From the sequence record LR756502.1: a stretch of 64,000 bases of DNA, one strand, 5' to 3'. The position numbers and the translations under genes were made by a program. This document shows positions 23,652 through 56,846 of the stretch, piece after piece. The first letter of the stretch is position 1; each line of letters opens with the position of its first letter. Below the pieces are notes generated by a model. The model did no database searches. It worked only from the letters and a program-made list of their open reading frames with translations, and was not told where the DNA came from.

Positions 23652-23725
23652 TAGCCCCTGCCGGATTTGAACCGGCGACCCACAGATTATGAGTCTGTCG
23701 CTCTAACCAACTGAGCTAAGGGGCT
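23652..23725 (-). tRNA. tRNA with CAT anticodon, probably Ile2 rather than Met; no encoded CCA
   Basis: AGCCCCT/AGGGGCT acceptor stem, TAGCTCAGTTGGTTAGAGC, loop CTCATAA, GGTTCAAATCC; resembles bacterial tRNA-Ile2. Confidence 0.9.
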
Positions 23726-23826
23726 AAATTGGGAGGCGTCTCCTAACCACAGGATACTCCCACCAGTTAAGACATACAGAGTATGATCCTAACTGAGCAC
23801 ATTCACCACTAAAAGATCCAAATATA

Positions 23827-24081
23827 TTATTTAACTGTGATTACAATAGTTCCCGTAATTTCAACTAACTTGCCAGTTGCAGCATCTTCAAAGTACCACC
23901 CATCAGAATTATCTTCATTGGAAATACTTCCGGTTGATTCCCATCGGGAAATAACTGTACCAGTAGCTCCATAAAGAGTTACGATATGTGGTTTATTCAT
24001 TGCACTAAACTGTGCTCTTGTTGAATCTTTACAAGATGATAATCCAATAATAGCAATTGATAAGATAATAAATTTCTTCAT
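23827..24081 (-). CDS. Putative lipoprotein
   Basis: MKKFIILSIAIIGLSSC lipobox. Confidence 0.75.
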   Translation of the reverse strand: MKKFIILSIAIIGLSSCKDSTRAQFSAMNKPHIVTLYGATGTVISRWESTGSISNEDNSDGWYFEDAATGKLVEITGTIVITVK

Positions 24082-24201
24082 AGTTTTTTATTTATTTATA
24101 CAAATATAGTTAAAATTTAAATACAAACCAAATTATTTATTAAATATGATAGAAAACCTGCCTTTATTAATAATATAAATATAGTAAGGTTTTTCCTAAC
24201 T

Positions 24202-24285
24202 AATTTAGTTTGTGCTAATTGTCATAGGGAAATCCATGAGGAAATAAGTAGTTTATCTAAAAATAAAACACTCACTCATAACTGA
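24202..24285 (+). pseudogene. C-terminal remnant of an HNH endonuclease
   Basis: NLVCANCHREIH in a frame with no start codon. Confidence 0.55.
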
Positions 24286-24307
24286 GTGAGTGAGTGAGTG
24301 AGTGTAG

Positions 24308-24381
24308 TGATCCCGTCCGGGATCAAACCGGAAACCTTTGGTTTAGAAAACCAACGCTCTATTCAGTTGAGCTACGGAACC
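24308..24381 (-). tRNA. tRNA-Arg(TCT); no encoded CCA
   Basis: GGTTCCG/CGGGATC acceptor, TTGGT-TTTCTAA-ACCAA anticodon arm, slightly variant T loop. Confidence 0.9.
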
Positions 24382-24404
24382 ATTGTTTTTATTTATTCTC
24401 TTTA

Positions 24405-24578
24405 CTATTGATCCCAAGTCCAAGTATCTTTAAGACCTTCTGGTTTATCTGGTATGTTTATATAATAAAAGAATTTGAACCTATAATACTTTCTAAGGAA
24501 TCCAATAACAAGTAGATTGTTTGATACCTTATCAGCCTCGGTGTATTTCTTAATGTAAATATAGTCTTTTATTTTCAT
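24405..24578 (-). CDS. 57-aa hypothetical protein (not in ORF track)
   Basis: MKIKDYIYIKKYTEADKV...TWDQ*, after sigma-A motif at 24608. Confidence 0.45.
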   Translation of the reverse strand: MKIKDYIYIKKYTEADKVSNNLLVIGFLRKYYRFKFFYYINIPDKPEGLKDTWTWDQ

Positions 24579-24642
24579 ATTCCAAAATGATTTAAAATAA
24601 TATAACCCAAATATACAAAATATCTGGGTTATATTATAATTT

Positions 24643-26619
24643 TTATTCAGCTTTCTCGTAATGTGAGAAAACCATTGTGTAATCGCCTCGACCTGAGGTG
24701 ATAGTTCTAAGATCGGTCATATAACCAAACATCTTAGATATGGGAACATTAACCTGGATATACTTAAGGGCTCCTCGGTCACTAAGTTCGGATATTTCAC
24801 CATGTCTTTTACTTAGATCACTCACAACACCACCTGTATAAACTTCAGGTGTAATAACTCTTGCTGACATTATAGGCTCTAACAAGTAAGGCTTACAACT
24901 TTCAAGAACATTACGAAATGCTTCCTGTGCACATAATTCAAAAGAATAAGAGTCAGAATCCACAGAATGGAAGCTACCATCAATCAATCTTACTTTCATA
25001 GACTGAATAGGATAACCATGTGACCCATTATTGATAGAATTCTTAAATCCTTTCTCAATAGAAGGAATAAACTCTCTTGGAATTACACCACCACTTATCT
25101 CATTAATGAATTGTAGACCCTCAATTCCGTCATCCGCAGGTCCAATTTCAAACTGGATATCAGCGAATTTACCTCTACCTCCGGTCTGTTTACTTAATAC
25201 CTCACGATGTTTTATGGTATTTTGTAATCTTTCCTTATAGGCAACTTTAGGTATACCTTTATTAACTTCGACATTATAATCAGTTCTAAGAAGCTCTATC
25301 TTGACCTCAAGATGTAACTCTCCCATACCACTTATAATGGTTTGTCCTAACTCGGAGTCACTCCTCACAATGAAGGTAGGATCCTCGTCTGTTAGTTTAG
25401 ATAATGCAACACCAATCTTATCATAATCCAATTGAGTTTTTGGCTCGATGGCTATTGATATAACCGGATCTGGGAAGTTCATAGACTCTAACACGATAGG
25501 ATTATTAACATCACATAAAGTATGACCAGTCTTTGGGTTCTTCAAACCAACTATTGCTACTATATCACCAGCATATGCAATATCAACAGCTTTTTTAGAG
25601 TTTGCATGCATCTGGTAGATTCTGGATATTCGTTCCTTTTCTCCAGATACTGAGTTAAGTACAGTGTCTCCAGGTTCTAATTTACCATCATAAACTCTAA
25701 TAAAAGTAAGTTTACCATGTGTATCAGATACAACCTTGAAGATTAAACCAACGAATGGCTTATTCACATCACCGCCTCTATCCAACGGACTAGGGAGTAA
25801 GTTCACAATATGGTCTAATAAGGCTTGTACACCCTTATCTTTGAAGGCAGATCCACAAAGAACAGGAACAATTGTATTAGATATACATCCAGCTTGTAAT
25901 GCATTTATAATATCATCATAAGATATATCAACATTGTTCATATACTTATCTAAGATAATATCATTAACATCCGCTAGAGATTCAATCATAATATTTCTCA
26001 TGCTAGTTGCTAGTTCAATCATATCTGAAGGGATATCAGTAACTTCAATATTTATGCCTCTCTCACCACTTTGGTAGATAGCTTTCATACTGATAAGGTC
26101 AATAATACCTTCGAATTTATCCTCTGATCCAATCGGTATTTGAATAGCGATAGGGTTTGCTCCAAGCTTTTCTTTTATATCCTTAACAACGCTAAGGAAA
26201 TCAGATCCAGTTCTATCCATTTTATTAACAAATGCAATACGACTTACGTTGTAATCATTGGCTAATCTCCAATTTGTTTCAGATTGAGGTTCAACACCAT
26301 CAACTGCTGAGAATAGGAATACAAGACCATCCAATACACGGAGAGACCTATTCACTTCAACGGTAAAGTCAACGTGACCAGGAGTATCAATAATATTGAT
26401 TTGATTTTTATTCCACTCACAAGTAGTAGAGGCGGATGTGATAGTTATACCACGATCTCTCTCTTGTTTCATGTGATCCATAGTTGTATTTCCATCATGG
26501 ACTTCTCCAATCTTATGGTTTACACCTGTGTAATATAGTATGCGTTCTGTAAGCGTAGTTTTTCCGCTATCAATATGGGCAACAATGCCGATGTTTCTTA
26601 TGTTAGAAAGATTTTTCAT
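24643..26619 (-). CDS. fusA: Elongation factor G
   Basis: [72 protein letters not shown] and [20 protein letters not shown] all intact. Confidence 0.95.
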
Positions 26620-26709
26620 TTTTATAATATGTTTTTTAAATTATCTGTAATAGACAACAAAGCCATTCTTTGTAATGTATTCAGTAAAATTTAGGAAATA
26701 AAACTTCTA

Positions 26710-26774
26710 GCCAACCACCGTGGATTTGTGTGGTTGGGTTATACAACAGCGCGTATGTAGATTAAAGTTTTCAT
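26710..26774 (-). promoter_or_regulatory. fusA leader: uORF MKTLIYIRAVV* (26739-26774) plus hairpin (26710-26738)
   Basis: ATG just downstream of sigma-A motif at 26781; CCAACCAC/GTGGTTGG stem directly after the uORF stop. Confidence 0.65.
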
Positions 26775-26867
26775 ATTATTCAAATATAAGGATATATATT
26801 AGATTTTCCTACTTTGTTTTATCTTTTTTTATTTTTTGTGTAAATGGATAAGTAATATATAGTTGTA

Positions 26868-27362
26868 ATGAAACACTTAAAGTCATATAACGAAGGATTG
26901 CTAGATTATTTTAAGAAAAATACTCCAGATGATAAACTCACATTGAGTATGATTAATCGCCTTGAAAAAATTAAAGATAATAATCCTTATTATATTGGTG
27001 GGATAATGGATGGTGTTGGTGAATTGCCAACGTGGATAAGCTATTATAAGGGCGTAAATGATAGAGAATTTTATAGTATAATCTATTTGGTTAGATTTGA
27101 TGATGTTGATATTCTGGTAACCAATGATAGACATAACTTAGTTAATGAAACTGGGGAACATGTTAGGCAAGAGTTGTGTGAGCATCCTTGGAAGTTATTT
27201 ATTGGATCAAATTCAAATGAATTGTGTGAAAAGATAAAGTCTAGAGAGTCGTATCGTATTAAACTATTTAAATTAGTTGATAAAATCTACAAAAGTGATA
27301 TTGAGAGGGATAGAATTGAAAGAATATCTAATGAGATTAACCCAGCGGCTGATTTATTATAA
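26868..27362 (+). CDS. Tagged protein, NPAADxL family paralog 3
   Basis: MKHLKSYNE...NEINPAADLL; TAATATATA at 26853. Confidence 0.75.
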   Translation: MKHLKSYNEGLLDYFKKNTPDDKLTLSMINRLEKIKDNNPYYIGGIMDGVGELPTWISYYKGVNDREFYSIIYLVRFDDVDILVTNDRHNLVNETGEHVRQELCEHPWKLFIGSNSNELCEKIKSRESYRIKLFKLVDKIYKSDIERDRIERISNEINPAADLL

Positions 27363-27740
27363 CCCTAATTCATCTAATTTAATATCTCTTAGTAATGATT
27401 TTATCTTATCCGAGTCTACTCTCAGTGATCCAGCAGGAACAACATCGTGATGTGGTAGTGCATAAATTAATTTACCACCACCTACGGCCTTGAAGCCGGT
27501 AAAATCGTTTTGTGTATACCAAAAGTAATCTGCTAATGGTTCTTTGTGAAGGATATTTAGTATTTGTTGTAGGGATTCTTTTTCAGCCTTATCCATATCA
27601 ACCTTGTTATATATCTGCCATGCCAGGGTTGGATCAGGATTAGATCCTTTTGCATCACTATATTTTGTAGAAAAAAAAGGGTGATTGCTTTTCTTAAGCC
27701 AATTTGTAAAGTCTTCTTTGAAACAATATCTTGGGTCCAT
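27357..27740 (-). CDS. Hypothetical protein, C-terminal RDIKLDELGL tag
   Basis: ORF track plus motif. Confidence 0.7.
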   Translation of the reverse strand: MDPRYCFKEDFTNWLKKSNHPFFSTKYSDAKGSNPDPTLAWQIYNKVDMDKAEKESLQQILNILHKEPLADYFWYTQNDFTGFKAVGGGKLIYALPHHDVVPAGSLRVDSDKIKSLLRDIKLDELGL

Positions 27741-28000
27741 TACATTATTTTATTTAATTGTAGTTCTCTCCACTGGTCTTTACTTATTATTCTTTCCCAG
27801 ATTTCTGAATGAGCGAAATGTTTAGTACCATCTTCTAGGTTAGTTATTGATCCGGATTGCCAGTTACTGCCAAAGTTTTTATTTATAGCATCAATTTTAT
27901 ATCTATCACCTGGATTGAAATGATAATCATAAGATCCACCTTGTTTGCCATATCTAGCGGTGTAGACTGATTTGAAATAGACTATATCACCTACTTTCAT
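27740..28000 (-). CDS. SH3/KOW-like protein, C-terminal RELQLNKIM tag
   Basis: MKVGDIVYF start. Confidence 0.65.
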   Translation of the reverse strand: MKVGDIVYFKSVYTARYGKQGGSYDYHFNPGDRYKIDAINKNFGSNWQSGSITNLEDGTKHFAHSEIWERIISKDQWRELQLNKIM

Positions 28001-28003
28001 ATG

Positions 28004-28372
28004 TTACATGTTGTATAATTCAGCTTCCATTTCGGAACCTATCACATTTTTAATACCAAGTAAGTCGTTTATTCTTCTATCTCTAAGGTTTTGAATAATT
28101 TTCATTTTATCTTTTCTTAATATCTTTATCTCACGCATTACATATATTTTAAAAACAGTTGCAAAATAAGAGATACTGTTGCCCTTAGTAGGATCAAATT
28201 TGGACACATGTGAATAACAATAATCTAGACCACCCATCAAAATATCCATCTTCAAACAGGATATAGTATCTTGGTCAAGAATTACACCATTACTGCAAAG
28301 GCCATCAATATGCTTAGATAGACTATTGTTATATAGTTTAACTATACTTTGAATTTGTTTTTTGGTGATTAT
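28004..28372 (-). CDS. Hypothetical helical protein with RDRRINDLL motif; sigma-region-2-like segment
   Basis: KFDPTKGNSISYFATV resembles the sigma-factor xFDP motif (weak); probable start MNKIITKK. Confidence 0.5.
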   Translation of the reverse strand: MITKKQIQSIVKLYNNSLSKHIDGLCSNGVILDQDTISCLKMDILMGGLDYCYSHVSKFDPTKGNSISYFATVFKIYVMREIKILRKDKMKIIQNLRDRRINDLLGIKNVIGSEMEAELYNM

Positions 28373-28373
28373 T

Positions 28374-28688
28374 TTATTCATAATAGTAGACAGTCTTCTC
28401 TTTTCTAACACACTCTACCGCTGTTTGCTCAAGCATATCGGAACCATTATGACCAAATTGTGTATAGGTAAACTTAAAGAACTTACCATCTGATCGACGC
28501 ATTATTACTGTATCATAATCAACAAACCCTTTTTCAGCATCAAAGTCTTTTTCGATTGATTGTATGTGAACAAATCCATCCCAATCATCAGGCATAAGAT
28601 CTTCAAGGTCTGGATATTTATCGTTCTTAGCAATATCTTCTATTGCTAGTCTTTCTTTTGAGTCGTTTTGTTTTCTAATATGTTTCAT
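28374..28688 (-). CDS. Hypothetical protein
   Basis: ORF track. Confidence 0.65.
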   Translation of the reverse strand: MKHIRKQNDSKERLAIEDIAKNDKYPDLEDLMPDDWDGFVHIQSIEKDFDAEKGFVDYDTVIMRRSDGKFFKFTYTQFGHNGSDMLEQTAVECVRKEKTVYYYE

Positions 28689-28698
28689 AATAGTATTT

Positions 28699-37476: not shown

Positions 37477-38082
37477 TTAGTTGTATTTTATAGTATTATT
37501 AATCTCGTTTACTTGTCTTTGAACATCATCCCCGTCATTGTTGAATATGGTATATTCAGACATTATCATTTTATCATTTGATGATATTTGTGACTTCATC
37601 CTACTTCTGTAATCATTCTCATCGAATCCACTTCTTTCAAATGCTCTTTTCATTCTAATATCCTCATTAGCAAATACATATATTACTTCATCAAGCCTAT
37701 CTTTTAATTCTGTCTCATAAAGTATGGCTGATTCTGCGATAATATACTTTTCATCCTTGTTTGTATCACAGAAATTTATGAACTCATCAAATACATATGG
37801 ATGTGCTAGCTCATTTAATCTTTGTAGCTTTGATTCACCACCCTTAACGAATATAATTCCTCTAATAACATCTGGTATCATTTTACCATTCTCATCATAT
37901 ACTTCACCAAATTCCTTAACAATCTGATCTTTAAGTGGTTGTTTATTATTTATAACATATCTAGCTACATCATCTGAATAGAATACTGGTACTCCTAATT
38001 GTTCAAATAGTTTTGCGCAGTAACTCTTTCCGCTGCCCATCTCTCCAGTTATACCTACTTTAATCATTTTTATAGTCATCAA
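37477..38082 (-). CDS. coaE: Dephospho-CoA kinase
   Basis: VGITGEMGSGKS, LNELAHP, AESAILYE, RMKSQ, IFNN. Confidence 0.9.
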   Translation of the reverse strand: MMTIKMIKVGITGEMGSGKSYCAKLFEQLGVPVFYSDDVARYVINNKQPLKDQIVKEFGEVYDENGKMIPDVIRGIIFVKGGESKLQRLNELAHPYVFDEFINFCDTNKDEKYIIAESAILYETELKDRLDEVIYVFANEDIRMKRAFERSGFDENDYRSRMKSQISSNDKMIMSEYTIFNNDGDDVQRQVNEINNTIKYN

Positions 38083-38754: not shown

Positions 38755-39489
38755 TTAGTTTTTGTTTAGTATTTTAGATATTTCTGTCTCTGGTAACCTT
38801 GGTGATTCCTTTTCATCCTTGAACTGACTAACTATGCTAAAGTTTTCATCATCAAGTATAGAAATATTCATAATGTATCCATCACATTTCACCTCTAGAT
38901 TGTTATCAGATATTGATATTGGTATTATTTCCTTTTCTGGATTAAGATCAAAGTTACTAATATTTTTTAAAAAGTTCCAATTTTCGTTTTTATAGTATTC
39001 TATCTTTAAAAGTTTTATGAATTTTGACTTCTTATTGATAACAACATTCTTAGGTACTCCAAATACATCTTTCCATTTGAATCCAATTGTTATATGTAAA
39101 TCTATTTTAGGTAATTCATATCTACTTCTTACTGCATTTAGCTTATCACTATTACAAACTATAAAGTATGTGCGGTTACCATTTCTCTCAGCTGTGCCAA
39201 CTCCCATCATTTTAAGATCATCAATATCATATTTTAGTATTTGGTCAATAGAATTAACTAGCTTATCAACACCTATCTTAGATAGTGCATTATATTCCAT
39301 TACATTTATTGTTGTGATGTGATATGATCCGTGGTCTCTTTCCTTTTGATTCTTTGTGTATAGTTCAAAGTCATCTCCTATTATATCTTTTAGTTCATTT
39401 AAAAATGGTTCAACAGCACCAGTTGGTATGTTTATACCAATGTAGTTACTCCCCGTGATGTCTTTTAAGTAAGTTAAATAATATATCAT
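38755..39489 (-). CDS. 2H phosphoesterase (cyclic phosphodiesterase / RNA-repair-type)
   Basis: Two HxT motifs, YHITT and LHITIGF. Confidence 0.75.
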   Translation of the reverse strand: MIYYLTYLKDITGSNYIGINIPTGAVEPFLNELKDIIGDDFELYTKNQKERDHGSYHITTINVMEYNALSKIGVDKLVNSIDQILKYDIDDLKMMGVGTAERNGNRTYFIVCNSDKLNAVRSRYELPKIDLHITIGFKWKDVFGVPKNVVINKKSKFIKLLKIEYYKNENWNFLKNISNFDLNPEKEIIPISISDNNLEVKCDGYIMNISILDDENFSIVSQFKDEKESPRLPETEISKILNKN

Positions 39490-39507: not shown

Positions 39508-39858
39508 TTATTTGATTTTTAGTAAAGTGATTGTTGATGTATATTTTCTGGTTATATTTGGGAATTCTTTAACATATAGAAGACATATATAAACATCTTG
39601 TTCGCAAAGACGATTTTTATATGTTCCATCCCACGCAATATTTGAATTGGTGTGATATACTACTTCACTGTTTCTATTGTATATAAACATCTCTATTGAT
39701 GTTGATCCAGTAACTACTGGATAAAATGTGTCATTTATACCATCACCATCAGGTGTGAATGCGTTTGGTATAGTTACAATACTTTTTTGTGAATATCCAA
39801 TTGTGGTAACAAATAGTAAGATAGTTATAATTACTCTTTTTAAGTTTTTAATTTCCAT
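39508..39858 (-). CDS. Stand-alone T9SS type B C-terminal domain (gliding motility-associated CTD) with signal peptide
   Basis: Signal-like MEIKNLKRVIITILLFVTTIGYSQ, then IPNAFTPDGDGINDTF...IYNR...WDGTY...VY. Confidence 0.9.
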   Translation of the reverse strand: MEIKNLKRVIITILLFVTTIGYSQKSIVTIPNAFTPDGDGINDTFYPVVTGSTSIEMFIYNRNSEVVYHTNSNIAWDGTYKNRLCEQDVYICLLYVKEFPNITRKYTSTITLLKIK

Positions 39859-39868: not shown

Positions 39869-41053
39869 TCAATTTATTATTAGTTGTTTAAATTTTTCTA
39901 TTTCTAATCTCTTTATTTCATCACCCAAAGGCTTACCCTTTAATCCTTGATTCATTAATTCTTGAGCAGAAGTTGTTGGTCTGTATTTGACAAAAGAAAT
40001 ACATTCCTTACCCAAACCAGCAATTGATATCCACTCTTCAATAGACTCATCACTTATTCTGAATGAGTTTCTTTTTGCGTGGTACTCAGCAACCATTTCT
40101 GGTGTGAAATCTTTTAACCAAAGCATAAATGTCACCTCACGAGCAATCGGATGTGCTGCCGTATTTGGAATATTACATTCTTGTATCAATCTATCAACCA
40201 TATCTGAGAACTCAGTAACCTTCTCATCTATAAATAAATTGGATAAGTATAATATCAGTGAACTACACTTAACAATGTTATGATTTATCTTCATACCTGG
40301 AAAAATATATTCCCAAATATCAAATTTGTCAATATATTTCAAGTATAAACTAAAGTCTTTTACTTGTCCGTAAGCCTTGAAGAACTCTTCCCATATACGA
40401 TTCTTTACAATAATTTTCAATTGATCCTTGTTCTTATGAACAGACTTTAATGTTCCTTCTTCAATAGTGTAATCATATCTAGCGGTAAATCTTAAAAGTC
40501 TTAGAATTCTTAAAGGATCTTCCTTAATTCTCATATCTGGGTCACCTACAAATCTTGTTATACCGTTTCTAAGATCCTCCAGTCCATTTACTAAGTCAAT
40601 AATCTTTCTTTGTTCCAAGTCATAGAATAGAGCATTCCATGTTAAGTCACGTCTCTCAACGTCCTTCTCGATTGTGGAAAATTTAGTGGTAGGATTTCTT
40701 GATATACCTAACATATCACCATAAATATCCTCTCTAAAAGTAGCAACCTCCATACCTAATGGTTGATCTTCTGTATAAACAACAACAACGAAGAATGATT
40801 CTCCTTGTACAGTTGTTCTCCATTTCTTACCAATGATTGATAATACCTCATCTGGTGTGGCATCTGTGGCTAAGTCAAAATCTTTTGGCTTATCGTTGTT
40901 TAAAAAATCCCTTACAGAACCACCAACAACGAATAGTTTTTTACCAGCTGATTTAAAAAGAGTATGTAACTCCTTAACGGACTCTGGGATTATATCCCAC
41001 ATATCTTTTGTTTGAATTGATTCCAAGAATTTAGCGTATTTAGTTATTATCAT
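39869..41053 (-). CDS. cca: CCA tRNA nucleotidyltransferase / poly(A) polymerase family
   Basis: VGGSVRD, KDFDLATDA, EVATFRED, RRDLTWNAL, EDPLRILRLLRF. CCA versus poly(A) activity not resolved. Confidence 0.85.
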   Translation of the reverse strand: MIITKYAKFLESIQTKDMWDIIPESVKELHTLFKSAGKKLFVVGGSVRDFLNNDKPKDFDLATDATPDEVLSIIGKKWRTTVQGESFFVVVVYTEDQPLGMEVATFREDIYGDMLGISRNPTTKFSTIEKDVERRDLTWNALFYDLEQRKIIDLVNGLEDLRNGITRFVGDPDMRIKEDPLRILRLLRFTARYDYTIEEGTLKSVHKNKDQLKIIVKNRIWEEFFKAYGQVKDFSLYLKYIDKFDIWEYIFPGMKINHNIVKCSSLILYLSNLFIDEKVTEFSDMVDRLIQECNIPNTAAHPIAREVTFMLWLKDFTPEMVAEYHAKRNSFRISDESIEEWISIAGLGKECISFVKYRPTTSAQELMNQGLKGKPLGDEIKRLEIEKFKQLIIN

Positions 41054-44401: not shown

Positions 44402-45862
44402 TTACTCTGTTTTCTCGACCATAATTTGCTTAACCTTGCCATTTGATTTAGTAATTGGTACCTTAACTCCAATTGAAATCATAAGAACTCTCCCCTTTAT
44501 CTTAGATAAGTCAAGCGAATCGCAATATCCGTCAGTGAGGACAACAGTATTGAAATCATTAAACTGGTCAGCTACTAGGTTAATAGCTGGTTGAAGAATG
44601 GTACCACCCAACCCCTTAATTGGAATAGTCTCAAGCTTACGTTTGCTTTTGATTCGTTGAATCCACTTAACCTCTGTATCAGCTTCGATTAAGTTTACCT
44701 CAATGTCATTTCGGTAAATGTATGACAATACCTTTTCAAAAGTACCACCCATTGAACCAGATGTATCAAGAATAGCGTTAATGGTGGTCTTAACCTTTCG
44801 GTTACCTTTAAGGCCAGAAATCTGTCTACGATTTGGTTTAACAATAGTTTTCTGTTTTATAGTACCAAAAATCATATTTGATACTGCTCGTTTTATTTCA
44901 CGTAGGTAATCTTTACGCTTCTTACGAAGTTTGTTGATGGTTGTCTCAACATTACCAGCGGATAGACCACGAGCGGCTAAACGCTCCATAACGTCTTTAA
45001 CCATAGCTTCACGCATTTCTTCGGGAACTTCATCACCGATGTGCTTATCCATGTATTCACCAGTTCCATTCTCTATGTCTTGAAAGATTTGCTCTTTTGA
45101 CCAAGTATCCATAGACTCACCATCTTTAGATGGATTTTTACCATAAGGTCCGTATGATGGTTTACCACTTGAGTCATTAGCTCCTTCATTGCCTGTACCT
45201 TGACAATCTGGACAAGGATCCCCTTTACCTTCTCCTTTACCCTCGCCTTTACCTGGTTTGTCTCCAGGTTTGTCTCCAGGTTGGCCTTCGCCTTTACCAT
45301 CTTTTGGTTGACCTTTATCGTCTTTCTTACCAGACCCATTACAAGACTTACATTGTTTATTCTGCTTGTTTTGCTTATCCCACTTCTCTTTCTCGTCCTT
45401 CAACCACTCATAAAGCTCCTCGAAGATTAGCTTACCTGTGTAGTCTTTTGGAATGAATAGTGCCATATTCTTACCATTTTTATCCTTAGGAATTTCAACA
45501 AATAAATGCGGAATATCCTCCCAAATAACATGGTTGATAATCATGTCTTGTGCGATGTTAGACATTTTATGGTCATACTGACCACTAACAGTACGTTTTG
45601 GGTGATTGAATAGTAAGTGGAAATCCTCGTGAAGAGTGATAAAGTTTACTTCCTTCTGAGACATGTCAGCAAGGAATGTTGGTGAGTAGAAGAAATTCAT
45701 ACCCTTTGCAGTTACGTTAACTCCACAAGTTCCAATTGAGTCTTGCTCGTGGAAGTTTATATGAAGATTAAATTCTCCATAGTATGGGAGATTAACCTTC
45801 GTATCAATTAACATCGTCTGAATACCATTAAGTAATTTTTCGTGTACGTTCTTAACAATCAT
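44402..45862 (-). CDS. Metallopeptidase-like + VWA domain protein (DUF2201-like, MoxR partner)
   Basis: LHEDFHL (HExxH), ILDTSGSM (MIDAS), GGT, VLTDG; CKSC/CPDC around GDKPG repeats. Confidence 0.85.
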   Translation of the reverse strand: MIVKNVHEKLLNGIQTMLIDTKVNLPYYGEFNLHINFHEQDSIGTCGVNVTAKGMNFFYSPTFLADMSQKEVNFITLHEDFHLLFNHPKRTVSGQYDHKMSNIAQDMIINHVIWEDIPHLFVEIPKDKNGKNMALFIPKDYTGKLIFEELYEWLKDEKEKWDKQNKQNKQCKSCNGSGKKDDKGQPKDGKGEGQPGDKPGDKPGKGEGKGEGKGDPCPDCQGTGNEGANDSSGKPSYGPYGKNPSKDGESMDTWSKEQIFQDIENGTGEYMDKHIGDEVPEEMREAMVKDVMERLAARGLSAGNVETTINKLRKKRKDYLREIKRAVSNMIFGTIKQKTIVKPNRRQISGLKGNRKVKTTINAILDTSGSMGGTFEKVLSYIYRNDIEVNLIEADTEVKWIQRIKSKRKLETIPIKGLGGTILQPAINLVADQFNDFNTVVLTDGYCDSLDLSKIKGRVLMISIGVKVPITKSNGKVKQIMVEKTE

Positions 45863-51802: not shown

Positions 51803-52594
51803 TTAATTTAGAATAATATTCAGATTATTTGTTCTGCTTGGACAAATTTCATTTTCAGTAACTACATATGAGGCACCATACCTTATTATTGGTGACTTAA
51901 TATCATTTTCTATACAGACTATCTCATAGAGTATAGTAAATTCCTCATAGGAGGCATTAACATATGTAAATGGATATAGTTTATTTATAATGGTATTTGG
52001 CCTCCCGAATTCATATCCATTTATCATATAGTCAACATGTTTGTCGGTTATTTTACTAACAACGTTACCAATTGGATATTTAACAAGACACTTCTCTTCT
52101 CCATCCTCGGTATATCCCCACATTAATTCAAAAAATGCAATAGCATCCTCAATTATTGTTGAGACTACCATAGCGATAAGTGGATTATCCCAACTATATC
52201 GTATCTTAACCATTTCATTTTTGTAAACCTTATGTTCAACCTCTTCATTTCTATACACCTCTTCTCTTATATTAAAGAGTTTTGATATATCATATCCAAT
52301 CTCAAATCCATACTCAATTAACATATCAACTAGAATTAAAAAGTCCTTCTTTCTTTTCTTAATAACAGAGAAGGCGAAGTCATATTTAAATGTTGAGTAA
52401 TTTGGCTTCATGAATTCTTTAATTACTACATCATCGGCCCTACCAGCATGTATATCTGTTTTGGAATATCTGTCTAAGAATTTTAGCTTACTTTTAGGAT
52501 CTATTGGTGGTGCAATCATTCTACTGTGATTCCCTTTCACTAGAATATTGTTCCATTTATCAATCTCTTTATCCGAAAAATATCTCTTATCCAT
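51803..52594 (-). CDS. Hypothetical protein, C-terminal RTNNLNIIL tag variant
   Basis: ORF track. Confidence 0.65.
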   Translation of the reverse strand: MDKRYFSDKEIDKWNNILVKGNHSRMIAPPIDPKSKLKFLDRYSKTDIHAGRADDVVIKEFMKPNYSTFKYDFAFSVIKKRKKDFLILVDMLIEYGFEIGYDISKLFNIREEVYRNEEVEHKVYKNEMVKIRYSWDNPLIAMVVSTIIEDAIAFFELMWGYTEDGEEKCLVKYPIGNVVSKITDKHVDYMINGYEFGRPNTIINKLYPFTYVNASYEEFTILYEIVCIENDIKSPIIRYGASYVVTENEICPSRTNNLNIILN

Positions 52595-53240
52595 TTTTTA
52601 ATGTCTTTGCGTATCTAAAAATACTGTTAATCTTTCTATTTCTATTTTGATCCAAGGAGTAAGTTGGTTCAAATGTATCAAATTTATATTCCTTTCCACC
52701 CCAGCTTAAAAATGAGAAGTTAAATACAATTGATAGTCTAGTGAATAGTCTTTCAAATGCAATATAGTCCTTATTTACTCTTAAGTCATATAGATACATT
52801 ATCTTTATTAATCTCTTCTTTGATCTATTTGGTAACTTATTTATGAATATATGCATTCTATTGTTATAGTTAGGATTCTCTATTATTCTAGCTTTGACCT
52901 CCGAGCTAATACCACCACTCCAGTCATCATATTCTGATGTATCTTTCCTAGATATTGAGTATCCCCTTATATTATCTATTGTGTATTTACCGCCACCATT
53001 TAATACAATTGATGGTATAAGTGGGAATTGTTCAATTCCATTGTTTTGCCAACTTTTTGATTCTAATTTTGTTTCGTATTTAACTGTGCCGTATTTATTT
53101 CTACTATAAGTATTGCCGTTAACTTGATAGGACTCGGTACCTATCATTTCCCATTTTCTTTCAATGAGTGAGTAATTTTTGGAGTTTTTACTCAAGAAGT
53201 ACATCATTTCTGATATTGATGTACTAAGTTTATCTGCCAA
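52587..53240 (-). CDS. Hypothetical protein, C-terminal RNRKINSIF tag
   Basis: ORF track. Confidence 0.65.
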   Translation of the reverse strand: MADKLSTSISEMMYFLSKNSKNYSLIERKWEMIGTESYQVNGNTYSRNKYGTVKYETKLESKSWQNNGIEQFPLIPSIVLNGGGKYTIDNIRGYSISRKDTSEYDDWSGGISSEVKARIIENPNYNNRMHIFINKLPNRSKKRLIKIMYLYDLRVNKDYIAFERLFTRLSIVFNFSFLSWGGKEYKFDTFEPTYSLDQNRNRKINSIFRYAKTLKNG

Positions 53241-53315
53241 ATCTTTATTGGAGATGTCTTTTGTTCTGTAATTAATCTAATTGTTTTTCATAGTATTTAT
53301 TATTTTGTTTATATA

Positions 53316-54113
53316 TTAATTGTTTATTCTTTTGTTTGCCGCATCAATATAACTTTGCTGCATCTCAAGTCCGATGTAATTTCTATTCAATTCTTTCGCC
53401 GCCAATCCTGTAGTACCAACACCCATAAACGGGTCAAGTATTATATCTCCTGGTTTTGTTGATCCTTTTATAAAGTACTTTACAAATTCTAGTGGATATA
53501 CTGCCACATGGTCATTCGCTATTTTTTTTGATTCAGATGATATGTTTATCAAAGTTGATGGTAATGCTCCTTTTATATTTGGTGCCCAATCTTTGTACTC
53601 AGTGACCTCTTCTGATGTCCTTGCATATCTCTTTTTAAGGGAATTTTTCATTCTCTCTATTGACTTCTTAGCATACGTAACTCTCATTTCATCCAAGTTA
53701 AAATAGAAGTCTTTTGACTTTGTAAACCAAAATACATACTCAACTCTATCACCAAATCTACTTCTATTTGGAAGTCCTTTTAGTTTATTCCAGAATAACC
53801 TATCATACATCTTTAACCCAGTTTGCTTATGTAGTTCTGATATCAAATCAAAAACATATGGGTGTCTAAAACCATCTACGACTTTATCATTTATATTAAG
53901 TATAAATGATCCAGTTGGTTTAATGATCCTTTCAATTTCTTTACAATATGGAATAAACCACTCAACATATTTATCAGGATGAATGCCATCAAAGTCAATA
54001 TACTTCTTCATATTCGCGTATGGTGGGCTTGTTATTACCAAATCAACTGAATTGGAATCCATTTCTTTCATTAAATCTAGTGAGTCTCCTTGGTATATTT
54101 TATTTAATTCCAT
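53316..54113 (-). CDS. Site-specific DNA methyltransferase, beta class (probably N4-cytosine)
   Basis: VITSPPY, HVAVYP, ILDPFMGVGTT. Confidence 0.9.
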   Translation of the reverse strand: MELNKIYQGDSLDLMKEMDSNSVDLVITSPPYANMKKYIDFDGIHPDKYVEWFIPYCKEIERIIKPTGSFILNINDKVVDGFRHPYVFDLISELHKQTGLKMYDRLFWNKLKGLPNRSRFGDRVEYVFWFTKSKDFYFNLDEMRVTYAKKSIERMKNSLKKRYARTSEEVTEYKDWAPNIKGALPSTLINISSESKKIANDHVAVYPLEFVKYFIKGSTKPGDIILDPFMGVGTTGLAAKELNRNYIGLEMQQSYIDAANKRINN

Positions 54114-54302
54114 CGATTTCTATTCTATTTTTATTTTTTACTTCCATCCAAATGATCATATAAAAAAAGTAGGGCTTTATATGCGCTCAAATTATCTTCA
54201 TAGCACTTTCTAAAGTATTCTATATTATTAAATAGAATTTCATCACTATAAGTATATTCAAGACTTCTTATACCGACTACTATTAAATATTTTTCAAAAC
54301 TA

Positions 54303-54689
54303 TTATCCATTTACTATCTTTTCTAACTTTCTATCTCTTAGGACTTGCACTCTCTTGTATAGATTGTCTATTAGATCCTCCCCAAGTATTTCGAGAGTAC
54401 CGACCAAATGAACAATCTCATTGACTATATTTTGGTTATTAAGAAGGTCTGTGTAGTGGTTTATATCAAGTATGTCAATTGTTGTTATAATTCTGCCCGG
54501 CATGGACTCGGTAGTGACCATGAACATAGAGTTCTCTTCAACCTCATCCAAATTTAACCCAAATGGCTTCCTATCATTTGCTATATATTCAGTATGAAAA
54601 TGTCCCGAGTCATTAATTATCGAAACATATTCCTCTTTCCTCTTATTAACCAATATACATAATATTTCACTTCTCTCGATAGTCTCCAT
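54303..54689 (-). CDS. Hypothetical protein, C-terminal RDRKLEKIV tag
   Basis: ORF track. Confidence 0.65.
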   Translation of the reverse strand: METIERSEILCILVNKRKEEYVSIINDSGHFHTEYIANDRKPFGLNLDEVEENSMFMVTTESMPGRIITTIDILDINHYTDLLNNQNIVNEIVHLVGTLEILGEDLIDNLYKRVQVLRDRKLEKIVNG

Positions 54690-54690
54690 G

Positions 54691-55035
54691 TCAAGGCTTT
54701 TTTATTATGTGTTCTATATGAACCATTGTCATATCGTTATGTTCTAAACAAACCCTAATTATATCAGTTGAATCAATATTTTTATCTTCTAATAGATTTT
54801 CTATTTTTATATCTCTTCTATCTGCTTTTGCAAAAATTAAAACATCTACTTTATAATTTCTAATGAGTTTGTTGTCGTATAATCTTGAAACAATTTGATT
54901 ATTAAGAAGTCCTCTTAAAGTTTCTACTTTATCTTGATCAAATTCATATTTTAACATTTCACAATATTGCTCACAAAAGAATATTACAATATCATTACAA
55001 TATTTTTTTTGTATATCAGTTATACTTTTACCCAT
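54691..55035 (-). CDS. Hypothetical protein with RDIKIENLL motif
   Basis: ORF track. Confidence 0.65.
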   Translation of the reverse strand: MGKSITDIQKKYCNDIVIFFCEQYCEMLKYEFDQDKVETLRGLLNNQIVSRLYDNKLIRNYKVDVLIFAKADRRDIKIENLLEDKNIDSTDIIRVCLEHNDMTMVHIEHIIKKP

Positions 55036-55456
55036 TGAAGATTTTAGATATTATTTTTTCTCTGAAGCTTGATTTTGATATACTTTTGTATATTTGTGAT
55101 AGCTTATCTTCAACGAGATCTGATGATGGCTTAATACTAGAACAATATTTTCTATTTAGAATATCTCTTAGATTTATTATTGATGGATATGCATGTGATG
55201 TCACGTACATTGATCCTCCTGGTAGTTCTATGTTTCTAATCCAAAGTCCACATTGTGATTCGATTTCCCATCTATCGGATACCATCACATACTTAACACT
55301 TACTTCAAATTTAGAAAGTTCATCTTCTGATAAAGATGATAGTTTTGCTTCATTATTATATAATCCTTGTTGAGTTGCATGGGTCCATGATAACTCATCT
55401 GACTTTGTTGTATCTATTAACATAGATATAATTTCACTAACTTTATCGCTGATCAT
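55028..55456 (-). CDS. Hypothetical protein, C-terminal REKIISKIF tag
   Basis: ORF track. Confidence 0.65.
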   Translation of the reverse strand: MISDKVSEIISMLIDTTKSDELSWTHATQQGLYNNEAKLSSLSEDELSKFEVSVKYVMVSDRWEIESQCGLWIRNIELPGGSMYVTSHAYPSIINLRDILNRKYCSSIKPSSDLVEDKLSQIYKSISKSSFREKIISKIFNG

Positions 55457-55549
55457 TTAGCTTTTCTATTTTATATTTATAAATAGTGAGTGGTTTAGTG
55501 TTTCGATCATAAATATATTAATTATTTTATATTCCTGATGATTAACCTG

Positions 55550-56212
55550 TTATATCCCTATTCCTTTCAATTTACGATCCCTAATCCTCTGCTCAATGAT
55601 TGGCTTACTCGGTTCATACTTCAACTCATCTATATTCTTAATGTAGTATCTACACGCGCTATCATCATAGTACATACAATACTCACTATTATTTCTCTCT
55701 AAGCTACCTCTCATTGAACTACCAACCCTATTCTCAGACATATCAAGAATTATTAACAAATCAGAGTTGCTAGGTAATTCATACTTAACCACTCTAAAAT
55801 CATTAGTGCCCTTTGGCTTGTCCCACTCATCAAATGACTCATCACTGAAAACATCACCAGTTAAAAAGAATCGATAATAGAAACTATCATTATCACCTGA
55901 TATAAATTTATAGTATGGTCTATCAGAAAAATACTTCTTCTCAACCATCTTATAAATATCATTGTGCCATCCACCACCTACACCTGTATAATTAAATACA
56001 ACTATCTTACCAATCTCCTTATTAGACTTATTCGTAATAGGATGTTCAAAGATACCAACCACAGATAAACCATGCTCGTCATCTTCATCAATTCGATTGT
56101 TCTTATCCTTAACCCAGCTCAATAGAACTTCATCAGATTCAATCTTCTGATCCTTTGCATAATCTATAATAGACAACACATCATCAACTGTATATTCTTT
56201 AGTCTTACTCAT
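55550..56212 (-). CDS. Hypothetical protein, C-terminal RDRKLKGIGI tag
   Basis: ORF track. Confidence 0.7.
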   Translation of the reverse strand: MSKTKEYTVDDVLSIIDYAKDQKIESDEVLLSWVKDKNNRIDEDDEHGLSVVGIFEHPITNKSNKEIGKIVVFNYTGVGGGWHNDIYKMVEKKYFSDRPYYKFISGDNDSFYYRFFLTGDVFSDESFDEWDKPKGTNDFRVVKYELPSNSDLLIILDMSENRVGSSMRGSLERNNSEYCMYYDDSACRYYIKNIDELKYEPSKPIIEQRIRDRKLKGIGI

Positions 56213-56233
56213 TTATAATTTAGTTAAATTCAT

Positions 56234-56596
56234 TTATATACCTAGTTTCTTTAATTTATTATCTCTTATTATTCCAATCAATTCATATTCTATGAAATAT
56301 ATTAACTCCTTTATAACCGAATCACCAGCCTTATTTGATATAGGATTAACATATATCTGATCAGGTGATATACCAACCGTATTACTCAACATAGAGGAGA
56401 TCCTATTTGGAATATGCCTCGAAACAGAAGTTCGAGGTTCACTATAAATCTGAGTTTGAATAAGTATTGTGTCCTTTCTACGATCAATCGTAACCAATTT
56501 GTCACTTAACTCAATAACCTTCTTAGCTATCAAATGAACCCCTTCCTCAGTTGATGCCATTTCAATAACCATTTTATCCGATGTGTATAATGCCAT
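56234..56596 (-). CDS. Hypothetical protein, C-terminal RDNKLKKLGI tag
   Basis: ORF track. Confidence 0.7.
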   Translation of the reverse strand: MALYTSDKMVIEMASTEEGVHLIAKKVIELSDKLVTIDRRKDTILIQTQIYSEPRTSVSRHIPNRISSMLSNTVGISPDQIYVNPISNKAGDSVIKELIYFIEYELIGIIRDNKLKKLGI

Positions 56597-56634
56597 AATT
56601 ATTTAATTCCTATTTAAGTTTAATTAAGTTTAAT

Positions 56635-56846
56635 AAAGGACGGCAATCGTAGTCAACTTTCTGTTTAAAACATCATTTGTCTATTGGCCTCTACCTCGGC
56701 ATAATAACGCTTCTCACACGCTAGCCTGTTTTGAGTTGCACCCTCGCTAGTAATAACGACTGTTTAGGTCTCCTAACTTAAGAAGTGGTGTGTTGAACTT
56801 CCTCACATCCATTACTGGGTAGTGCGATGTAACATCCACCGTCTTT
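56635..56846 (-). ncRNA. rnpB: Minimal RNase P RNA
   Basis: P1 GACGGTGG/TTGCCGTC; P2 ACATC/GATGT; P3 with GTAA loop; GAGGAAGTTCAAC pairing with GTTGACT (P4 with bulged U); GGGTGCAAC; TAGACAAATGAT; AACAGAA. Order matches bacterial RNase P conserved regions I-V. Confidence 0.8.

What the first reader, a model, noticed from the sequence alone, without database searches (positions are those of the whole stretch)
23652..56846. Possible complete phage tRNA maturation/repair pathway scattered across the window
Seen: three tRNAs lacking encoded CCA, a CCA-adding-family enzyme (39869..41053), a 2H phosphoesterase two genes away (38755..39489), the RNase P-like RNA, and EF-G. Known: RNase P makes tRNA 5' ends, CCA enzymes make or repair 3' ends, and 2H enzymes open 2',3'-cyclic phosphates left by anticodon nucleases. 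Inference: the phage could mature and repair tRNAs independently of host enzymes, as a counter to tRNA-cleaving defences or to its own degradation of host RNA.
Basis: partly seen in the sequence, partly recalled or inferred. Interest (0 to 1): 0.7.

Follow-up and report, generated by a model that had tools for sequence, protein, structure and literature searches.

The report
Megaphage tRNA kit, own RNase P
A 642-kb bacteriophage carries its own tRNA-processing and repair genes, including a miniature RNase P ribozyme that I found in no paper or Rfam family and that also sits among the tRNA genes of many other large phages.

Summary
The window is bases 558001-622000 of the uncultured megaphage LR756502.1. 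It holds two tRNAs, not three, and both lack CCA. It also holds a class II nucleotidyltransferase, a 2H phosphoesterase with both HxT motifs, a full EF-G and an RNase P-like RNA.

The rest of the genome adds 44 tRNAs, so 43 of 46 lack CCA. It also adds an RnpA protein, three RNA ligase-like genes, a PNK-like kinase, a second 2H enzyme and a TilS-family gene.

The general idea of a phage tRNA supply and repair kit is already published for jumbo and huge phages. The new part is the RNA. It is 205 nt long and keeps the bacterial RNase P catalytic core: CR-I, CR-IV, CR-V and the P4 pseudoknot with its bulged U. Its specificity domain is only a stub.

It belongs to a family of at least 50 distinct phage sequences. 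Helices are 96% paired (63% in shuffles). All 295 tRNAs within 3 kb are on its strand. One member lies in a cultured Stenotrophomonas phage.

The transferase and 2H genes are adjacent in 5 of 5 relatives. Whether the transferase adds CCA or poly(A) is unresolved. "Complete" and "host-independent" are not shown.

The parts
56639..56843 (-). Miniature RNase P RNA (205 nt). It has P1-P3, CR-I (GAGGAAGUUC), the P4 pseudoknot with a bulged U, P5, a stub of about 55 nt in place of the S-domain, P15/L15 with a GGU motif, CR-IV and CR-V (ACAGAA).
   Evidence: Rfam RNaseP_arch gives 32.4 bits, below threshold. Model R1 gives 148.9 bits. Covariation was tested. It is the only copy in the 642-kb genome.
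39869..41053 (-). Class II nucleotidyltransferase (CCA-adding / poly(A) polymerase family), 394 aa, without an HD domain. Motifs GGxVRD..DxD, RRD and EDxxR are present.
   Evidence: PF01743 and PF12627 match. No NCBIfam equivalog cutoff is reached: pcnB subfamily 174.5 of 305.65, CCA 142.7 of 290. The best PDB matches are a CCA-adding enzyme (6ibp) and E. coli PAP (3aqm), almost equal.
39508..39858 (-). Small ORF (116 aa) with a CHU_C / type IX secretion sorting domain, between the transferase and the 2H gene. It is probably not part of the RNA module.
   Evidence: PF13585 at 1.6e-10. Small ORFs of variable content occupy this position in relatives.
38755..39489 (-). 2H phosphoesterase (2H-SAK family), 244 aa. 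Both HxT motifs are present, followed by a C-terminal extension of about 100 aa with unknown function.
   Evidence: PF22547 at 1.8e-17. Sequence read. It follows the transferase in 5 of 5 relatives.
24643..26619 (-). Elongation factor G, full length. It supports translation and is not part of tRNA maturation.
   Evidence: Five Pfam domains match. TIGR00484 scores 876.5 bits, above the cutoff of 659.4.
24307..24381 (-). tRNA-Arg(UCU) with no encoded CCA.
   Evidence: ARAGORN and Rfam at 59.6 bits. The 3' context was read.
23651..23725 (-). tRNA with a CAU anticodon and no encoded CCA. It is most like tRNA-Ile2, the lysidine-dependent AUA reader, rather than tRNA-Met.
   Evidence: ARAGORN and Rfam at 74.7 bits. 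It is 84-86% identical over its full length to E. coli genes annotated tRNA-Ile.
12008..12628 (+). P-loop kinase of the PNK / PSTK / KTI12 type. This is a weak assignment and only a possible RNA 5'-kinase.
   Evidence: PF13671 AAA_33 at 4.6e-7. TIGR03574 scores 41.7 bits, far below its cutoff. phmmer against T4 PseT gives E = 0.062.

Best explanation
The window is part of a translation-support region of a 642-kb megaphage that brings its own tRNA supply line.

(1) RNase P. The 205-nt RNA is a miniaturised bacterial-type RNase P RNA. It keeps the catalytic domain and only a stub of the specificity domain. I infer that it pairs with the phage's own RnpA protein, encoded about 90 kb away, to cut the 5' leaders off the phage's 46 tRNAs. 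Most of these tRNAs sit in tight arrays with spacers of 4-12 nt.

(2) 3'-end module. The transferase-2H gene pair is a conserved module for tRNA 3' ends. I infer that the transferase completes the CCA end that 43 of 46 phage tRNA genes lack, and that the 2H enzyme opens 2',3'-cyclic phosphate ends so that damaged 3' ends can be rebuilt. This is the same pairing of activities that E. coli has fused in one protein, its CCA enzyme with an HD phosphoesterase domain.

(3) Break repair. Elsewhere the genome has a T4 Rnl1-like ligase, two Rnl2-type ligase domains, a PNK-like kinase and a second 2H enzyme. Together these fit T4-style healing and sealing of broken tRNAs. A TilS-family enzyme fits the tRNA-Ile2-like gene in the window.

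Shown: sequence homology, motifs, structure covariation, gene neighbourhoods and co-occurrence. Inferred: every enzymatic activity, the RNA-protein partnership and the order of steps.
For: RNA identity:
- CR-I, CR-IV and CR-V are present, and P4 has a bulged U.
- Across 9, 13 and 50 family members, 97.4%, 90.9% and 96.0% of cells are paired, against 62-68% in shuffles and 27-45% with slid partners.
- P4 was not part of the covariance model, yet it is 97.4% paired, with compensatory changes at 5 of 8 pairs. Many of these sequences came from a search pattern that left both CR-I and the variable P4 bases unspecified.

Link to tRNAs:
- Of 50 unique family members, 37 have a tRNA within 3 kb and 27 have one within 300 nt.
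- All 295 tRNAs within 3 kb are on the RNA's strand.

RnpA:
- PF00825 scores 52.1 bits (cutoff 22.3) and TIGR00188 scores 52.5 (cutoff 38.35). The RNR motif is present and all PDB matches are RNase P proteins.
- The sister phage LR745206 has both RnpA and the RNA.

tRNAs: the genome has 46, of which 43 lack CCA.

Transferase-2H pair: adjacent in 5 of 5 relatives, down to 56% identity.

Other genome parts: Rnl1-like ligase (2e-28 against T4 rnlA; PF09511), PF09414 twice, AAA_33 kinase, second 2H enzyme and a PP-loop protein.
Against: - No expression or activity data exist for any part.
- The RNA fails every Rfam gathering score.
- It lacks the domain that bacterial enzymes use to bind the tRNA T-loop.
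- The sister phage's copy has changes at otherwise invariant CR-I and CR-V bases: GGAGAAAC and GCAAAA.
- In this genome the RNA, RnpA, the tRNA arrays and the ligases are spread over more than 200 kb. They are not an operon.
- The transferase scores highest against the PcnB subfamily model, though far below its cutoff.
- A motif search found no RNase Z or RtcB signature. That search was crude and not exhaustive.
- 2H enzymes in phages can also destroy cyclic-nucleotide immune signals. The genome's second 2H enzyme touches the Acb1 model.
Confidence: 0.7

Rival explanations
1. This is a loose collection, not a pathway. Huge phages accumulate many translation-related genes, and each acts on its own. 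tRNAs top up rare codons, EF-G sustains elongation, and the transferase backs up the host enzyme. No coordinated maturation or repair route exists, and none is independent of the host.
For: In this genome the parts are dispersed over more than 200 kb. Such gene sets are described as common in huge and jumbo phages (PMC7162821, PMC7824862). 343 phage records carry a transferase of this family.
Against: The transferase-2H adjacency is conserved in 5 of 5 relatives. The RNA lies in the same neighbourhood in three genomes. In other phages the RNA is interleaved with tRNA arrays on the same strand, 295 of 295 tRNAs.
Confidence: 0.2
2. The transferase-2H pair is not about tRNA ends. The transferase is a poly(A) polymerase that marks RNA for decay. 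The 2H enzyme degrades cyclic nucleotide or ADP-ribose-derived immune signals, as Acb1-type enzymes do, or processes by-products of RNA decay.
For: The best NCBIfam score is to the PcnB subfamily, and E. coli PAP is nearly tied as the best PDB match. Sources name the relatives only as "tRNA nucleotidyltransferase/poly(A) polymerase". 2H enzymes are known to target 2',3'-cyclic and NAD-derived products in jumbo phages (PMC7824862).
Against: 43 of 46 phage tRNA genes need CCA added. The protein is about 390 aa, the size of HD-less CCA enzymes, and lacks a PcnB-type C-terminal extension. The window's 2H protein matches the RNA-repair-associated 2H-SAK family and not Acb1. Aminoacyl-tRNA synthetase and RNA ligase genes lie beside the pair in relatives.
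Confidence: 0.15
3. The mini RNase P RNA is not a tRNA 5'-end maker. It could be a decoy that soaks up host RnpA, a decaying relic of a captured host gene, or a ribozyme retargeted to other RNAs because it lost the T-loop-reading domain.
For: The S-domain is missing. Universal bases have changed in the sister phage's copy. One locus has a second copy that lacks CR-I, and two hits are truncated at 127-147 nt. In this genome the RNA is about 170 kb from the main tRNA arrays.
Against: A relic would not keep 96% pairing with hundreds of compensatory changes across 50 divergent sequences. The catalytic core elements, the bulged U and the GGU motif that reads the tRNA 3' end are retained. The RNA is embedded in tRNA arrays on their strand. 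The phage also keeps its own RnpA. From established knowledge, a bacterial C-domain plus RnpA cleaves pre-tRNA in vitro (see PMC5839562).
Confidence: 0.1

Closest known systems
Bacterial type A RNase P RNA (E. coli M1 RNA) with RnpA/C5 protein
   Same: It has the same catalytic-domain layout: P1-P5, the CR-I GAGGAA-type motif, P4 with a bulged U, a J5/15 CAAA stretch, P15/L15 with GGU, and CR-IV/CR-V reading AAUAGAnnAAUGA...ACAGAA...GGCUA. The partner protein is of the bacterial RnpA type with an RNR motif. The copy in phage DLP_6 matches RNaseP_bact_a best, at 54.7 bits.
   Different: It is 205 nt rather than about 375-400 nt. P7-P14 and CR-II/CR-III are replaced by a stub of about 55 nt, there is no P18, and P16-P17 is short. 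It falls below the gathering score of every Rfam RNase P model. It is encoded by viruses.
Type T RNase P RNA of Pyrobaculum/Thermoproteaceae (about 200 nt, S-domain nearly absent)
   Same: It shows the same kind of reduction: a catalytic domain kept and a specificity domain almost lost, at a similar size. This comparison rests on my own knowledge of Lai et al. 2010; see also PMC13462272.
   Different: Type T works with archaeal proteins (Pop5, Rpp30, L7Ae). The phage RNA has bacterial-type CR-IV/CR-V sequence and comes with bacterial RnpA. Rfam's clan competition did not pick the type T model as the best match. I did not compare the two structures directly.
Short RNase P RNAs of DPANN archaea (about 210 nt)
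   Same: The same search pattern and the same covariance model hit three DPANN MAGs at 43-57 bits over the full model length. The size and the CR-I to CR-V spacing are similar.
   Different: Two of the three pass Rfam's archaeal gathering score, at 98 and 93 bits. The phage RNAs do not. These are cellular genes, one of them beside a 5S rRNA gene, not genes inside phage tRNA arrays.
E. coli multifunctional CCA enzyme (nucleotidyltransferase + HD phosphoesterase domain)
   Same: It combines a class II transferase with an enzyme that can clear 2',3'-cyclic or phosphorylated 3' ends. Here the same combination appears as two adjacent genes, conserved in 5 of 5 relatives.
   Different: The phosphoesterase here has the 2H fold, not the HD fold, and is a separate protein. 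The transferase reaches no CCA equivalog cutoff. Neither activity was tested.
T4 Pnkp + Rnl1 tRNA anticodon-loop repair, and the jumbo-phage RNA repair kits described by Iyer et al. 2021 (PMC7824862)
   Same: The genome has an Rnl1-like ligase (2e-28 against T4 rnlA), Rnl2-type ligase domains, a PNK-like kinase, 2H enzymes, a CCA-family transferase and many tRNAs. This matches the published inventory.
   Different: I found no fused kinase-phosphatase like T4 Pnkp, only kinase-like domains. The published inventories do not mention RNase P RNA or protein: the term occurs zero times in PMC7824862 and PMC7162821.

Membership tests
RNase P RNA (catalytic core shared by all RNA-based RNase P) | Conserved regions CR-I, CR-IV and CR-V in the right order | tested here: met
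   GAGGAAGUUC, AAUAGACAAAUGA and AAACAGAA..GACUAC are present. They are conserved across 50 relatives.
RNase P RNA (catalytic core shared by all RNA-based RNase P) | Long-range P4 helix between CR-I and CR-V with a bulged U | tested here: met
   AGU[U]CAAC pairs with GUUGACU. In 50 sequences the helix is 97.4% paired, and 5 of 8 pairs have changes on both sides. P4 was not part of the search model.
RNase P RNA (catalytic core shared by all RNA-based RNase P) | P1, P2, P3, P5 and P15 helices supported by covariation | tested here: met
   91-97% of cells paired, against 62-68% in shuffles and 27-45% with slid partners.
Bacterial type A RNase P RNA (Rfam RF00010) | Full specificity domain (P7-P14 with CR-II/CR-III) and a score above Rfam's gathering threshold | tested here: not met
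   Only about 55 nt lie between the two P5 strands. The best Rfam score is 32.4 bits against a threshold of 84. The DLP_6 copy scores 54.7 against 100.
RNase P RNA | Endonucleolytic cleavage of pre-tRNA at position +1 | not testable with these tools
   This needs an in vitro cleavage assay or in vivo complementation.
RnpA (bacterial RNase P protein) | Matches the family models above their curated cutoffs and has the RNR motif | tested here: met
   The gene lies outside the window, at record 525186-525488. PF00825 scores 52.1 (cutoff 22.3) and TIGR00188 scores 52.5 (cutoff 38.35). The motif reads KRAVDRNRVKRLMRE. All 11 PDB matches are RNase P proteins.
Class II CCA-adding enzyme | Head-domain motifs A (GGxxRD..DxD), B (RRD) and D (EDxxR) | tested here: met
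   The alignment to the CCA-adding enzyme 6ibp shows GGSVRD..DFD, RRD and EDPLR. PF01743 matches at 5e-29.
Class II CCA-adding enzyme | Assignment to CCA-adding rather than poly(A) polymerase, by a curated equivalog model or measured activity | tested here: inconclusive
   No NCBIfam cutoff is reached: the PcnB subfamily scores 174.5 of 305.65 and CCA scores 142.7 of 290. The PDB matches are nearly tied. The names of homologs are generic.
2H phosphoesterase | Two HxT/S motifs and a match to a 2H family model above its cutoff | tested here: met
   The motifs are H-I-T-T and H-I-T-I. PF22547 scores 64.2 bits against a cutoff of 27.
2H phosphoesterase acting on RNA 2',3'-cyclic phosphate ends | Hydrolysis of RNA>p | not testable with these tools
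   Only context supports this: the gene is adjacent to the transferase in 5 of 5 relatives. No solved homolog is detectable by sequence.
Elongation factor G | Five-domain architecture and the equivalog cutoff | tested here: met
T4-type tRNA healing and sealing (Pnkp + Rnl1) | An Rnl1-family ligase together with a bifunctional 5'-kinase/3'-phosphatase | tested here: inconclusive
   The ligase scores 74.3 on PF09511 (cutoff 28.3) but only 149.8 on TIGR02308 (cutoff 242.25). Only kinase-like AAA_33 domains were found and no DxDxT phosphatase was identified. All of these genes lie outside the window.

The most novel reading that the evidence does not exclude
Large phages encode their own RNase P. 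It is built around a new, miniaturised structural class of RNase P RNA, about 190-310 nt long, with a catalytic core and a vestigial specificity domain. This RNA is transcribed within phage tRNA arrays and works with phage or host RnpA. That would make 5'-end maturation of tRNA a virus-encoded ribozyme function. The RNA would also be released from the arrays by the same cuts that free the tRNAs.
Probability: 0.55. Interest if true: 0.85.

Novelty: new variant of a known kind. Interest (0 to 1): 0.72.

Why it matters
RNase P is regarded as a universal cellular housekeeping ribozyme. Phage tRNA clusters, the classic case being T4, are thought to rely on the host enzyme.

A phage-encoded RNase P would matter in four ways:
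- It would be a naturally minimised bacterial-type ribozyme that works with the small RnpA protein. That bears on how much RNA the enzyme really needs, and on how substrates are recognised without the T-loop-binding domain.
- It would extend what viruses are known to take over in translation: tRNA 5' ends as well as CCA ends, repair and elongation.
- It would point to host RNase P, or its loss during infection, as a bottleneck or a battleground.
- It is directly testable, because a cultured phage (Stenotrophomonas phage DLP_6) carries a family member in an unannotated gap.

Current annotation pipelines miss the family because it scores below all Rfam thresholds.

The conserved transferase-2H pair is a second, smaller lead. 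It is a split analogue of the bacterial CCA "addition and repair" enzyme.

Tried and rejected
- Third tRNA. ARAGORN and Rfam found none, even at permissive thresholds. The structured 100 nt upstream of tRNA(CAT) is not a tRNA.
- RnpA next to the RNA. The 120-aa ORF just downstream (56234-56596) and its neighbours do not match PF00825. The ORFs downstream of the RNA are not conserved between relatives. RnpA was found about 90 kb away instead.
- RnpA in the short loci that hold the RNA: none within 15 kb or less. The RNA near RnpA on two other viral contigs: none within 10 kb.
- First pattern scan. Most of its 89 hits were chance matches inside a helicase-like and a terminase-like gene. My filter for P4 complementarity made P4 support circular for that set. 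I repeated the test with a pattern that leaves CR-I and the variable P4 bases free.
- RNAalifold on a plain MAFFT alignment recovered only P2, P3 and P15, plus one spurious hairpin. P1 and P4 had to be anchored by hand.
- MFE folding of the single sequence is uninformative, at z = -0.79.
- CCA versus poly(A) polymerase. NCBIfam, PDB matches and homolog names could not settle it.
- The 2H protein has no solved relative detectable by sequence.
- Mar_Mega_1 (OU342829) is not in the collections. Only its published annotation table could be read.
- Crude motif searches for RNase Z (HxHxDH) and RtcB found nothing. This is not proof of absence.
- A sigma-70-type promoter scan around the RNA gave no more hits than shuffled sequence, and no terminator.
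- Eight literature searches found no report of a phage-encoded RNase P RNA (papers read).

Full report
**Where the window comes from.** The window is 100% identical to bases 558001-622000 of LR756502.1, an unannotated 642,428-bp "uncultured phage" genome. That genome is one of the largest huge-phage genomes reported. It comes from a freshwater lake and is sister to LR745206 and, more distantly, to the marine Mar_Mega_1 (PMC9723777). The window has no N and 31.8% G+C.

**Checking the observation.** ARAGORN and Rfam find two tRNAs, not three.
- They are tRNA(CAT) at 23651-23725(-) and tRNA-Arg(TCT) at 24307-24381(-). Both are followed by ...A-C-AAA or ...A-C-TAC, not CCA.
- The 100 nt upstream of tRNA(CAT) fold well (z = -2.96) but are not a tRNA.
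- EF-G (24643-26619) is complete and passes the NCBIfam equivalog cutoff.
- The protein at 39869-41053 has the PolyA_pol head and RNA-binding domains.
- The protein at 38755-39489 is a 2H phosphoesterase of the 2H-SAK family with both HxT motifs.
- One small ORF with a type IX secretion sorting domain lies between these two.
- At 56639-56843(-), Rfam's archaeal RNase P model gives a full-length match below threshold: 32.4 bits, gathering score 84, E = 1.5e-5 for the whole window.

**The RNase P-like RNA is real.**
- *Sequence features.* Read directly, it has GAGGAAGUUC (CR-I), AAUAGACAAAUGA (CR-IV) and AAACAGAAAGUUGACUAC (CR-V). AGU[U]CAAC pairs with GUUGACU to form P4 with the bulged U typical of RNase P. 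Only about 55 nt stand where the specificity domain should be.
- *Building the model.* BLAST found one relative, in the 595-kb phage LR756511. An exact-pattern scan of IMG/VR found more. From nine sequences I built a covariance model. On that alignment 97.4% of cells are paired, against 68% in shuffles and about 35% with slid partners. 23 of 30 pairs show changes on both sides.
- *Members outside the seed set.* The model then found copies in LR745206, at the syntenic position (88.9 bits), and in a 124-kb metagenome contig (120 bits). It also found a copy in the cultured Stenotrophomonas phage DLP_6, in an unannotated gap of its tRNA array (105 bits).
- *Independent test of P4.* My first candidate set had been filtered for P4 pairing. 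I therefore ran a second scan with a pattern that specifies only CR-IV/CR-V and leaves CR-I and the variable P4 bases free. 49 of 55 new loci hold a model hit. Nearly all have GAGGAAG(U/C)UC, followed by bases complementary to the free positions.
- *Family-wide covariation.* On 50 sequences, 96.0% of cells are paired, against 62.7% in shuffles and 27-42% with slid partners. P4, which is not in the model, is 97.4% paired with compensatory changes at 5 of 8 pairs.

**Association with tRNAs.** Among the 50 unique sequences (127-349 nt, median 214.5), 37 have a tRNA within 3 kb, 29 have three or more, and 27 have one within 300 nt. All 295 tRNAs within 3 kb are on the RNA's strand (examples). In several loci a tRNA ends 0-8 nt from the RNA, so the cuts that free the tRNAs would also free the RNA; this is an inference. 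A subgroup that includes the window, LR745206 and L230 has no tRNA nearby.

**What kind of RNase P RNA it is.**
- The CR-IV/CR-V stretch and the J5/15-P15-L15 region, including a GGU motif that in bacteria pairs with the tRNA 3' CCA, look bacterial type A by eye. This comparison with E. coli M1 is from memory and is a lead only.
- The DLP_6 copy matches RNaseP_bact_a best (54.7 bits).
- No phage copy reaches any Rfam gathering score, and several are not detected at all at E <= 1e-3. This explains why pipelines have not annotated them.
It gave model hits only in three DPANN archaeal MAGs and none in bacteria. Two of those three are bona fide short archaeal RNase P RNAs by Rfam.

**A matching protein.** The published annotation table of Mar_Mega_1 lists a "Ribonuclease P protein component".
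- Searching all ORFs of LR756502.1 with E. coli RnpA found one at record 525186-525488.
- It passes Pfam (52.1 bits, cutoff 22.3) and the NCBIfam equivalog (52.5, cutoff 38.35). It has the RNR motif, and all its PDB matches are RNase P proteins.
- LR745206 has a 52%-identical copy, so both sister megaphages carry the RNA and the protein.
- Two more viral contigs encode relatives.
- DLP_6 and LR756511 gave no tblastn hit at E <= 0.01, so those phages may use the host protein.

**The rest of the genome.** I fetched the whole record in pieces.
- *tRNAs.* It has 44 further tRNAs, all on one strand in arrays at 373-435 kb, and only one copy of the RNase P RNA. Of the 46 tRNAs, 3 end in CCA. All 43 others have C after the discriminator, and 32 continue CAAA. 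U is the base before the 5' end in 26 of 43.
- *Ligases and kinase.* phmmer with T4 proteins and Pfam found an Rnl1-like ligase (2e-28; PF09511), two PF09414 ligase domains and an AAA_33 kinase related to Pnkp kinases.
- *Other enzymes.* They also found a second 2H enzyme and a PP-loop protein of the TilS family.
- *tRNA-Ile2.* The window's tRNA(CAT) is 84-86% identical to E. coli tRNA-Ile genes of the ileX type. It is therefore probably the lysidine-dependent AUA reader, which fits the TilS-family gene.

**The transferase and the 2H enzyme.**
- *Transferase identity.* The transferase has motifs A, B and D of class II enzymes but reaches no curated cutoff. The PcnB subfamily model scores 174.5 of 305.65 and the best CCA model scores 142.7 of 290. 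A CCA-adding enzyme and E. coli poly(A) polymerase are nearly tied as the best PDB matches.
- *Its relatives.* It belongs to a large metagenomic clade of uniform length, about 390 aa, named only generically.
- *Conserved adjacency.* In LR745206 and in three contigs carrying proteins 56-69% identical, a 2H-SAK gene of about 245-250 aa follows on the same strand, after zero, one or two small ORFs. That makes 5 of 5. Aminoacyl-tRNA synthetase, RNA ligase, CoaE and DUF2201 genes recur nearby.
- *Reading.* This conserved pairing, the 43 CCA-less tRNA genes and the absence of an HD domain make a tRNA 3'-end completion and repair module the best reading. I put CCA addition at about 0.65. The activity remains untested.

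**Comparison with what is known.** Iyer et al. 2021 (PMC7824862) already describe jumbo-phage kits of tRNAs, RNA ligases, kinases, 2H phosphoesterases and CCA-adding enzymes as counter-measures to host attacks on tRNA. Al-Shayeb et al. 2020 (PMC7162821), the source of this genome, list CCA-adding enzymes and EF-G. Neither mentions RNase P. Eight full-text searches found no report of a phage-encoded RNase P RNA. I cannot exclude papers outside the searchable library.

**Verdict.**
- There is a phage tRNA maturation and repair toolkit, and its parts co-occur.
- "Complete" and "host-independent" are not demonstrated. EF-G does not belong to the pathway.
- The toolkit idea is known. The miniature phage RNase P RNA with a phage RnpA is, as far as I can tell, a new variant of a known kind, and it is the part worth following up.

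Noticed in passing
window 23651-23725 (-); LR756502.1 396202-396882 (L098:46202-46882): The tRNA that ARAGORN calls tRNA-Met(CAT) is 84-86% identical over its full length to E. coli tRNA-Ile genes of the ileX type. The genome also encodes a 227-aa PP-loop protein of the TilS family (PF01171, 2e-30). The phage may therefore bring both the AUA-reading tRNA and its lysidine synthetase.
   Followed up: partly
LR756502.1 tRNA genes (L098, L099, window): All 43 CCA-less tRNA genes have C right after the discriminator, and 32 continue CAAA. So C74 is encoded but C75 and A76 are not. This could be a 3'-processing signal, or it could let the RNase P GGU motif grip the precursor before CCA is completed.
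   Followed up: partly
window 23726-23826 (-): The roughly 100 nt directly upstream of tRNA(CAT) form three stable hairpins (MFE -31.2 kcal/mol, z = -2.96). They match no tRNA or Rfam family.
   Followed up: partly
window 24255-24305 (-): Directly after tRNA-Arg there is a CACT(CACT)n repeat that pairs with a downstream GAGTGAGTG stretch. It forms a terminator-like hairpin made from a tetranucleotide repeat.
   Followed up: no
L227:17061-17277 (LR745206.1 502061-502277): The sister phage's RNase P RNA has changes at otherwise invariant bases: CR-I reads GGAGAAACUUC and CR-V reads GCAAAA. P4 is kept through a compensatory G-C to C-G swap. The RNA may be active with altered chemistry or may be drifting.
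   Followed up: partly
L257:1883-2064 and 2375-2618; L235:9062-9188; L242:3389-3535: One viral contig (488 kb) has two copies of the RNase P-like RNA 300 nt apart, and the second copy lacks CR-I. Two other hits are 5'-truncated, at 127-147 nt. These could be pseudogenes or split forms.
   Followed up: no
L140:2783-2998, L173:3629-3845, L112:4755-4962: Three DPANN archaeal MAGs (Micrarchaeota, an "ainarchaeum" and an unnamed archaeon) have RNase P RNAs of only about 210 nt. Their CR-I to CR-V spacing matches that of the phage family. Two of them pass Rfam's archaeal threshold.
   Followed up: partly
L101:24020-24679 and 27016-27654 (LR756502.1 524-527.7 kb): The RnpA gene is flanked within 2 kb by two Pol-beta-superfamily nucleotidyltransferases. 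One matches PF18765 at 31 bits. The other has a weak, sub-threshold resemblance to the CCA/PAP head domain, with a GGAIRD..HDVD motif.
   Followed up: partly
window 39508-39858 (-): A 116-aa ORF carries a CHU_C / type IX secretion sorting domain. This domain is typical of Bacteroidota and hints at the host phylum.
   Followed up: no
window 44402-45862 (-), 37477-38082 (-): A DUF2201 metallopeptidase/VWA protein and a dephospho-CoA kinase (CoaE) lie near the transferase-2H pair. Both recur at similar positions in distant relatives (L229, L230), so this is a conserved island of unclear logic.
   Followed up: no
L106:2978-3251; L248, L255, L281, L286: Several phage loci that hold the RNase P-like RNA also hold a tmRNA gene close by, a permuted one in DLP_6. 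tRNA(CTA) genes, which ARAGORN labels tRNA-Pyl and which may be amber suppressors, occur on some of these contigs and on one RnpA-bearing contig.
   Followed up: no
window 53316-54113 (-), 57593-58285 (+): An N6/N4 DNA methyltransferase and an HNH endonuclease flank the region that holds the RNase P RNA.
   Followed up: no
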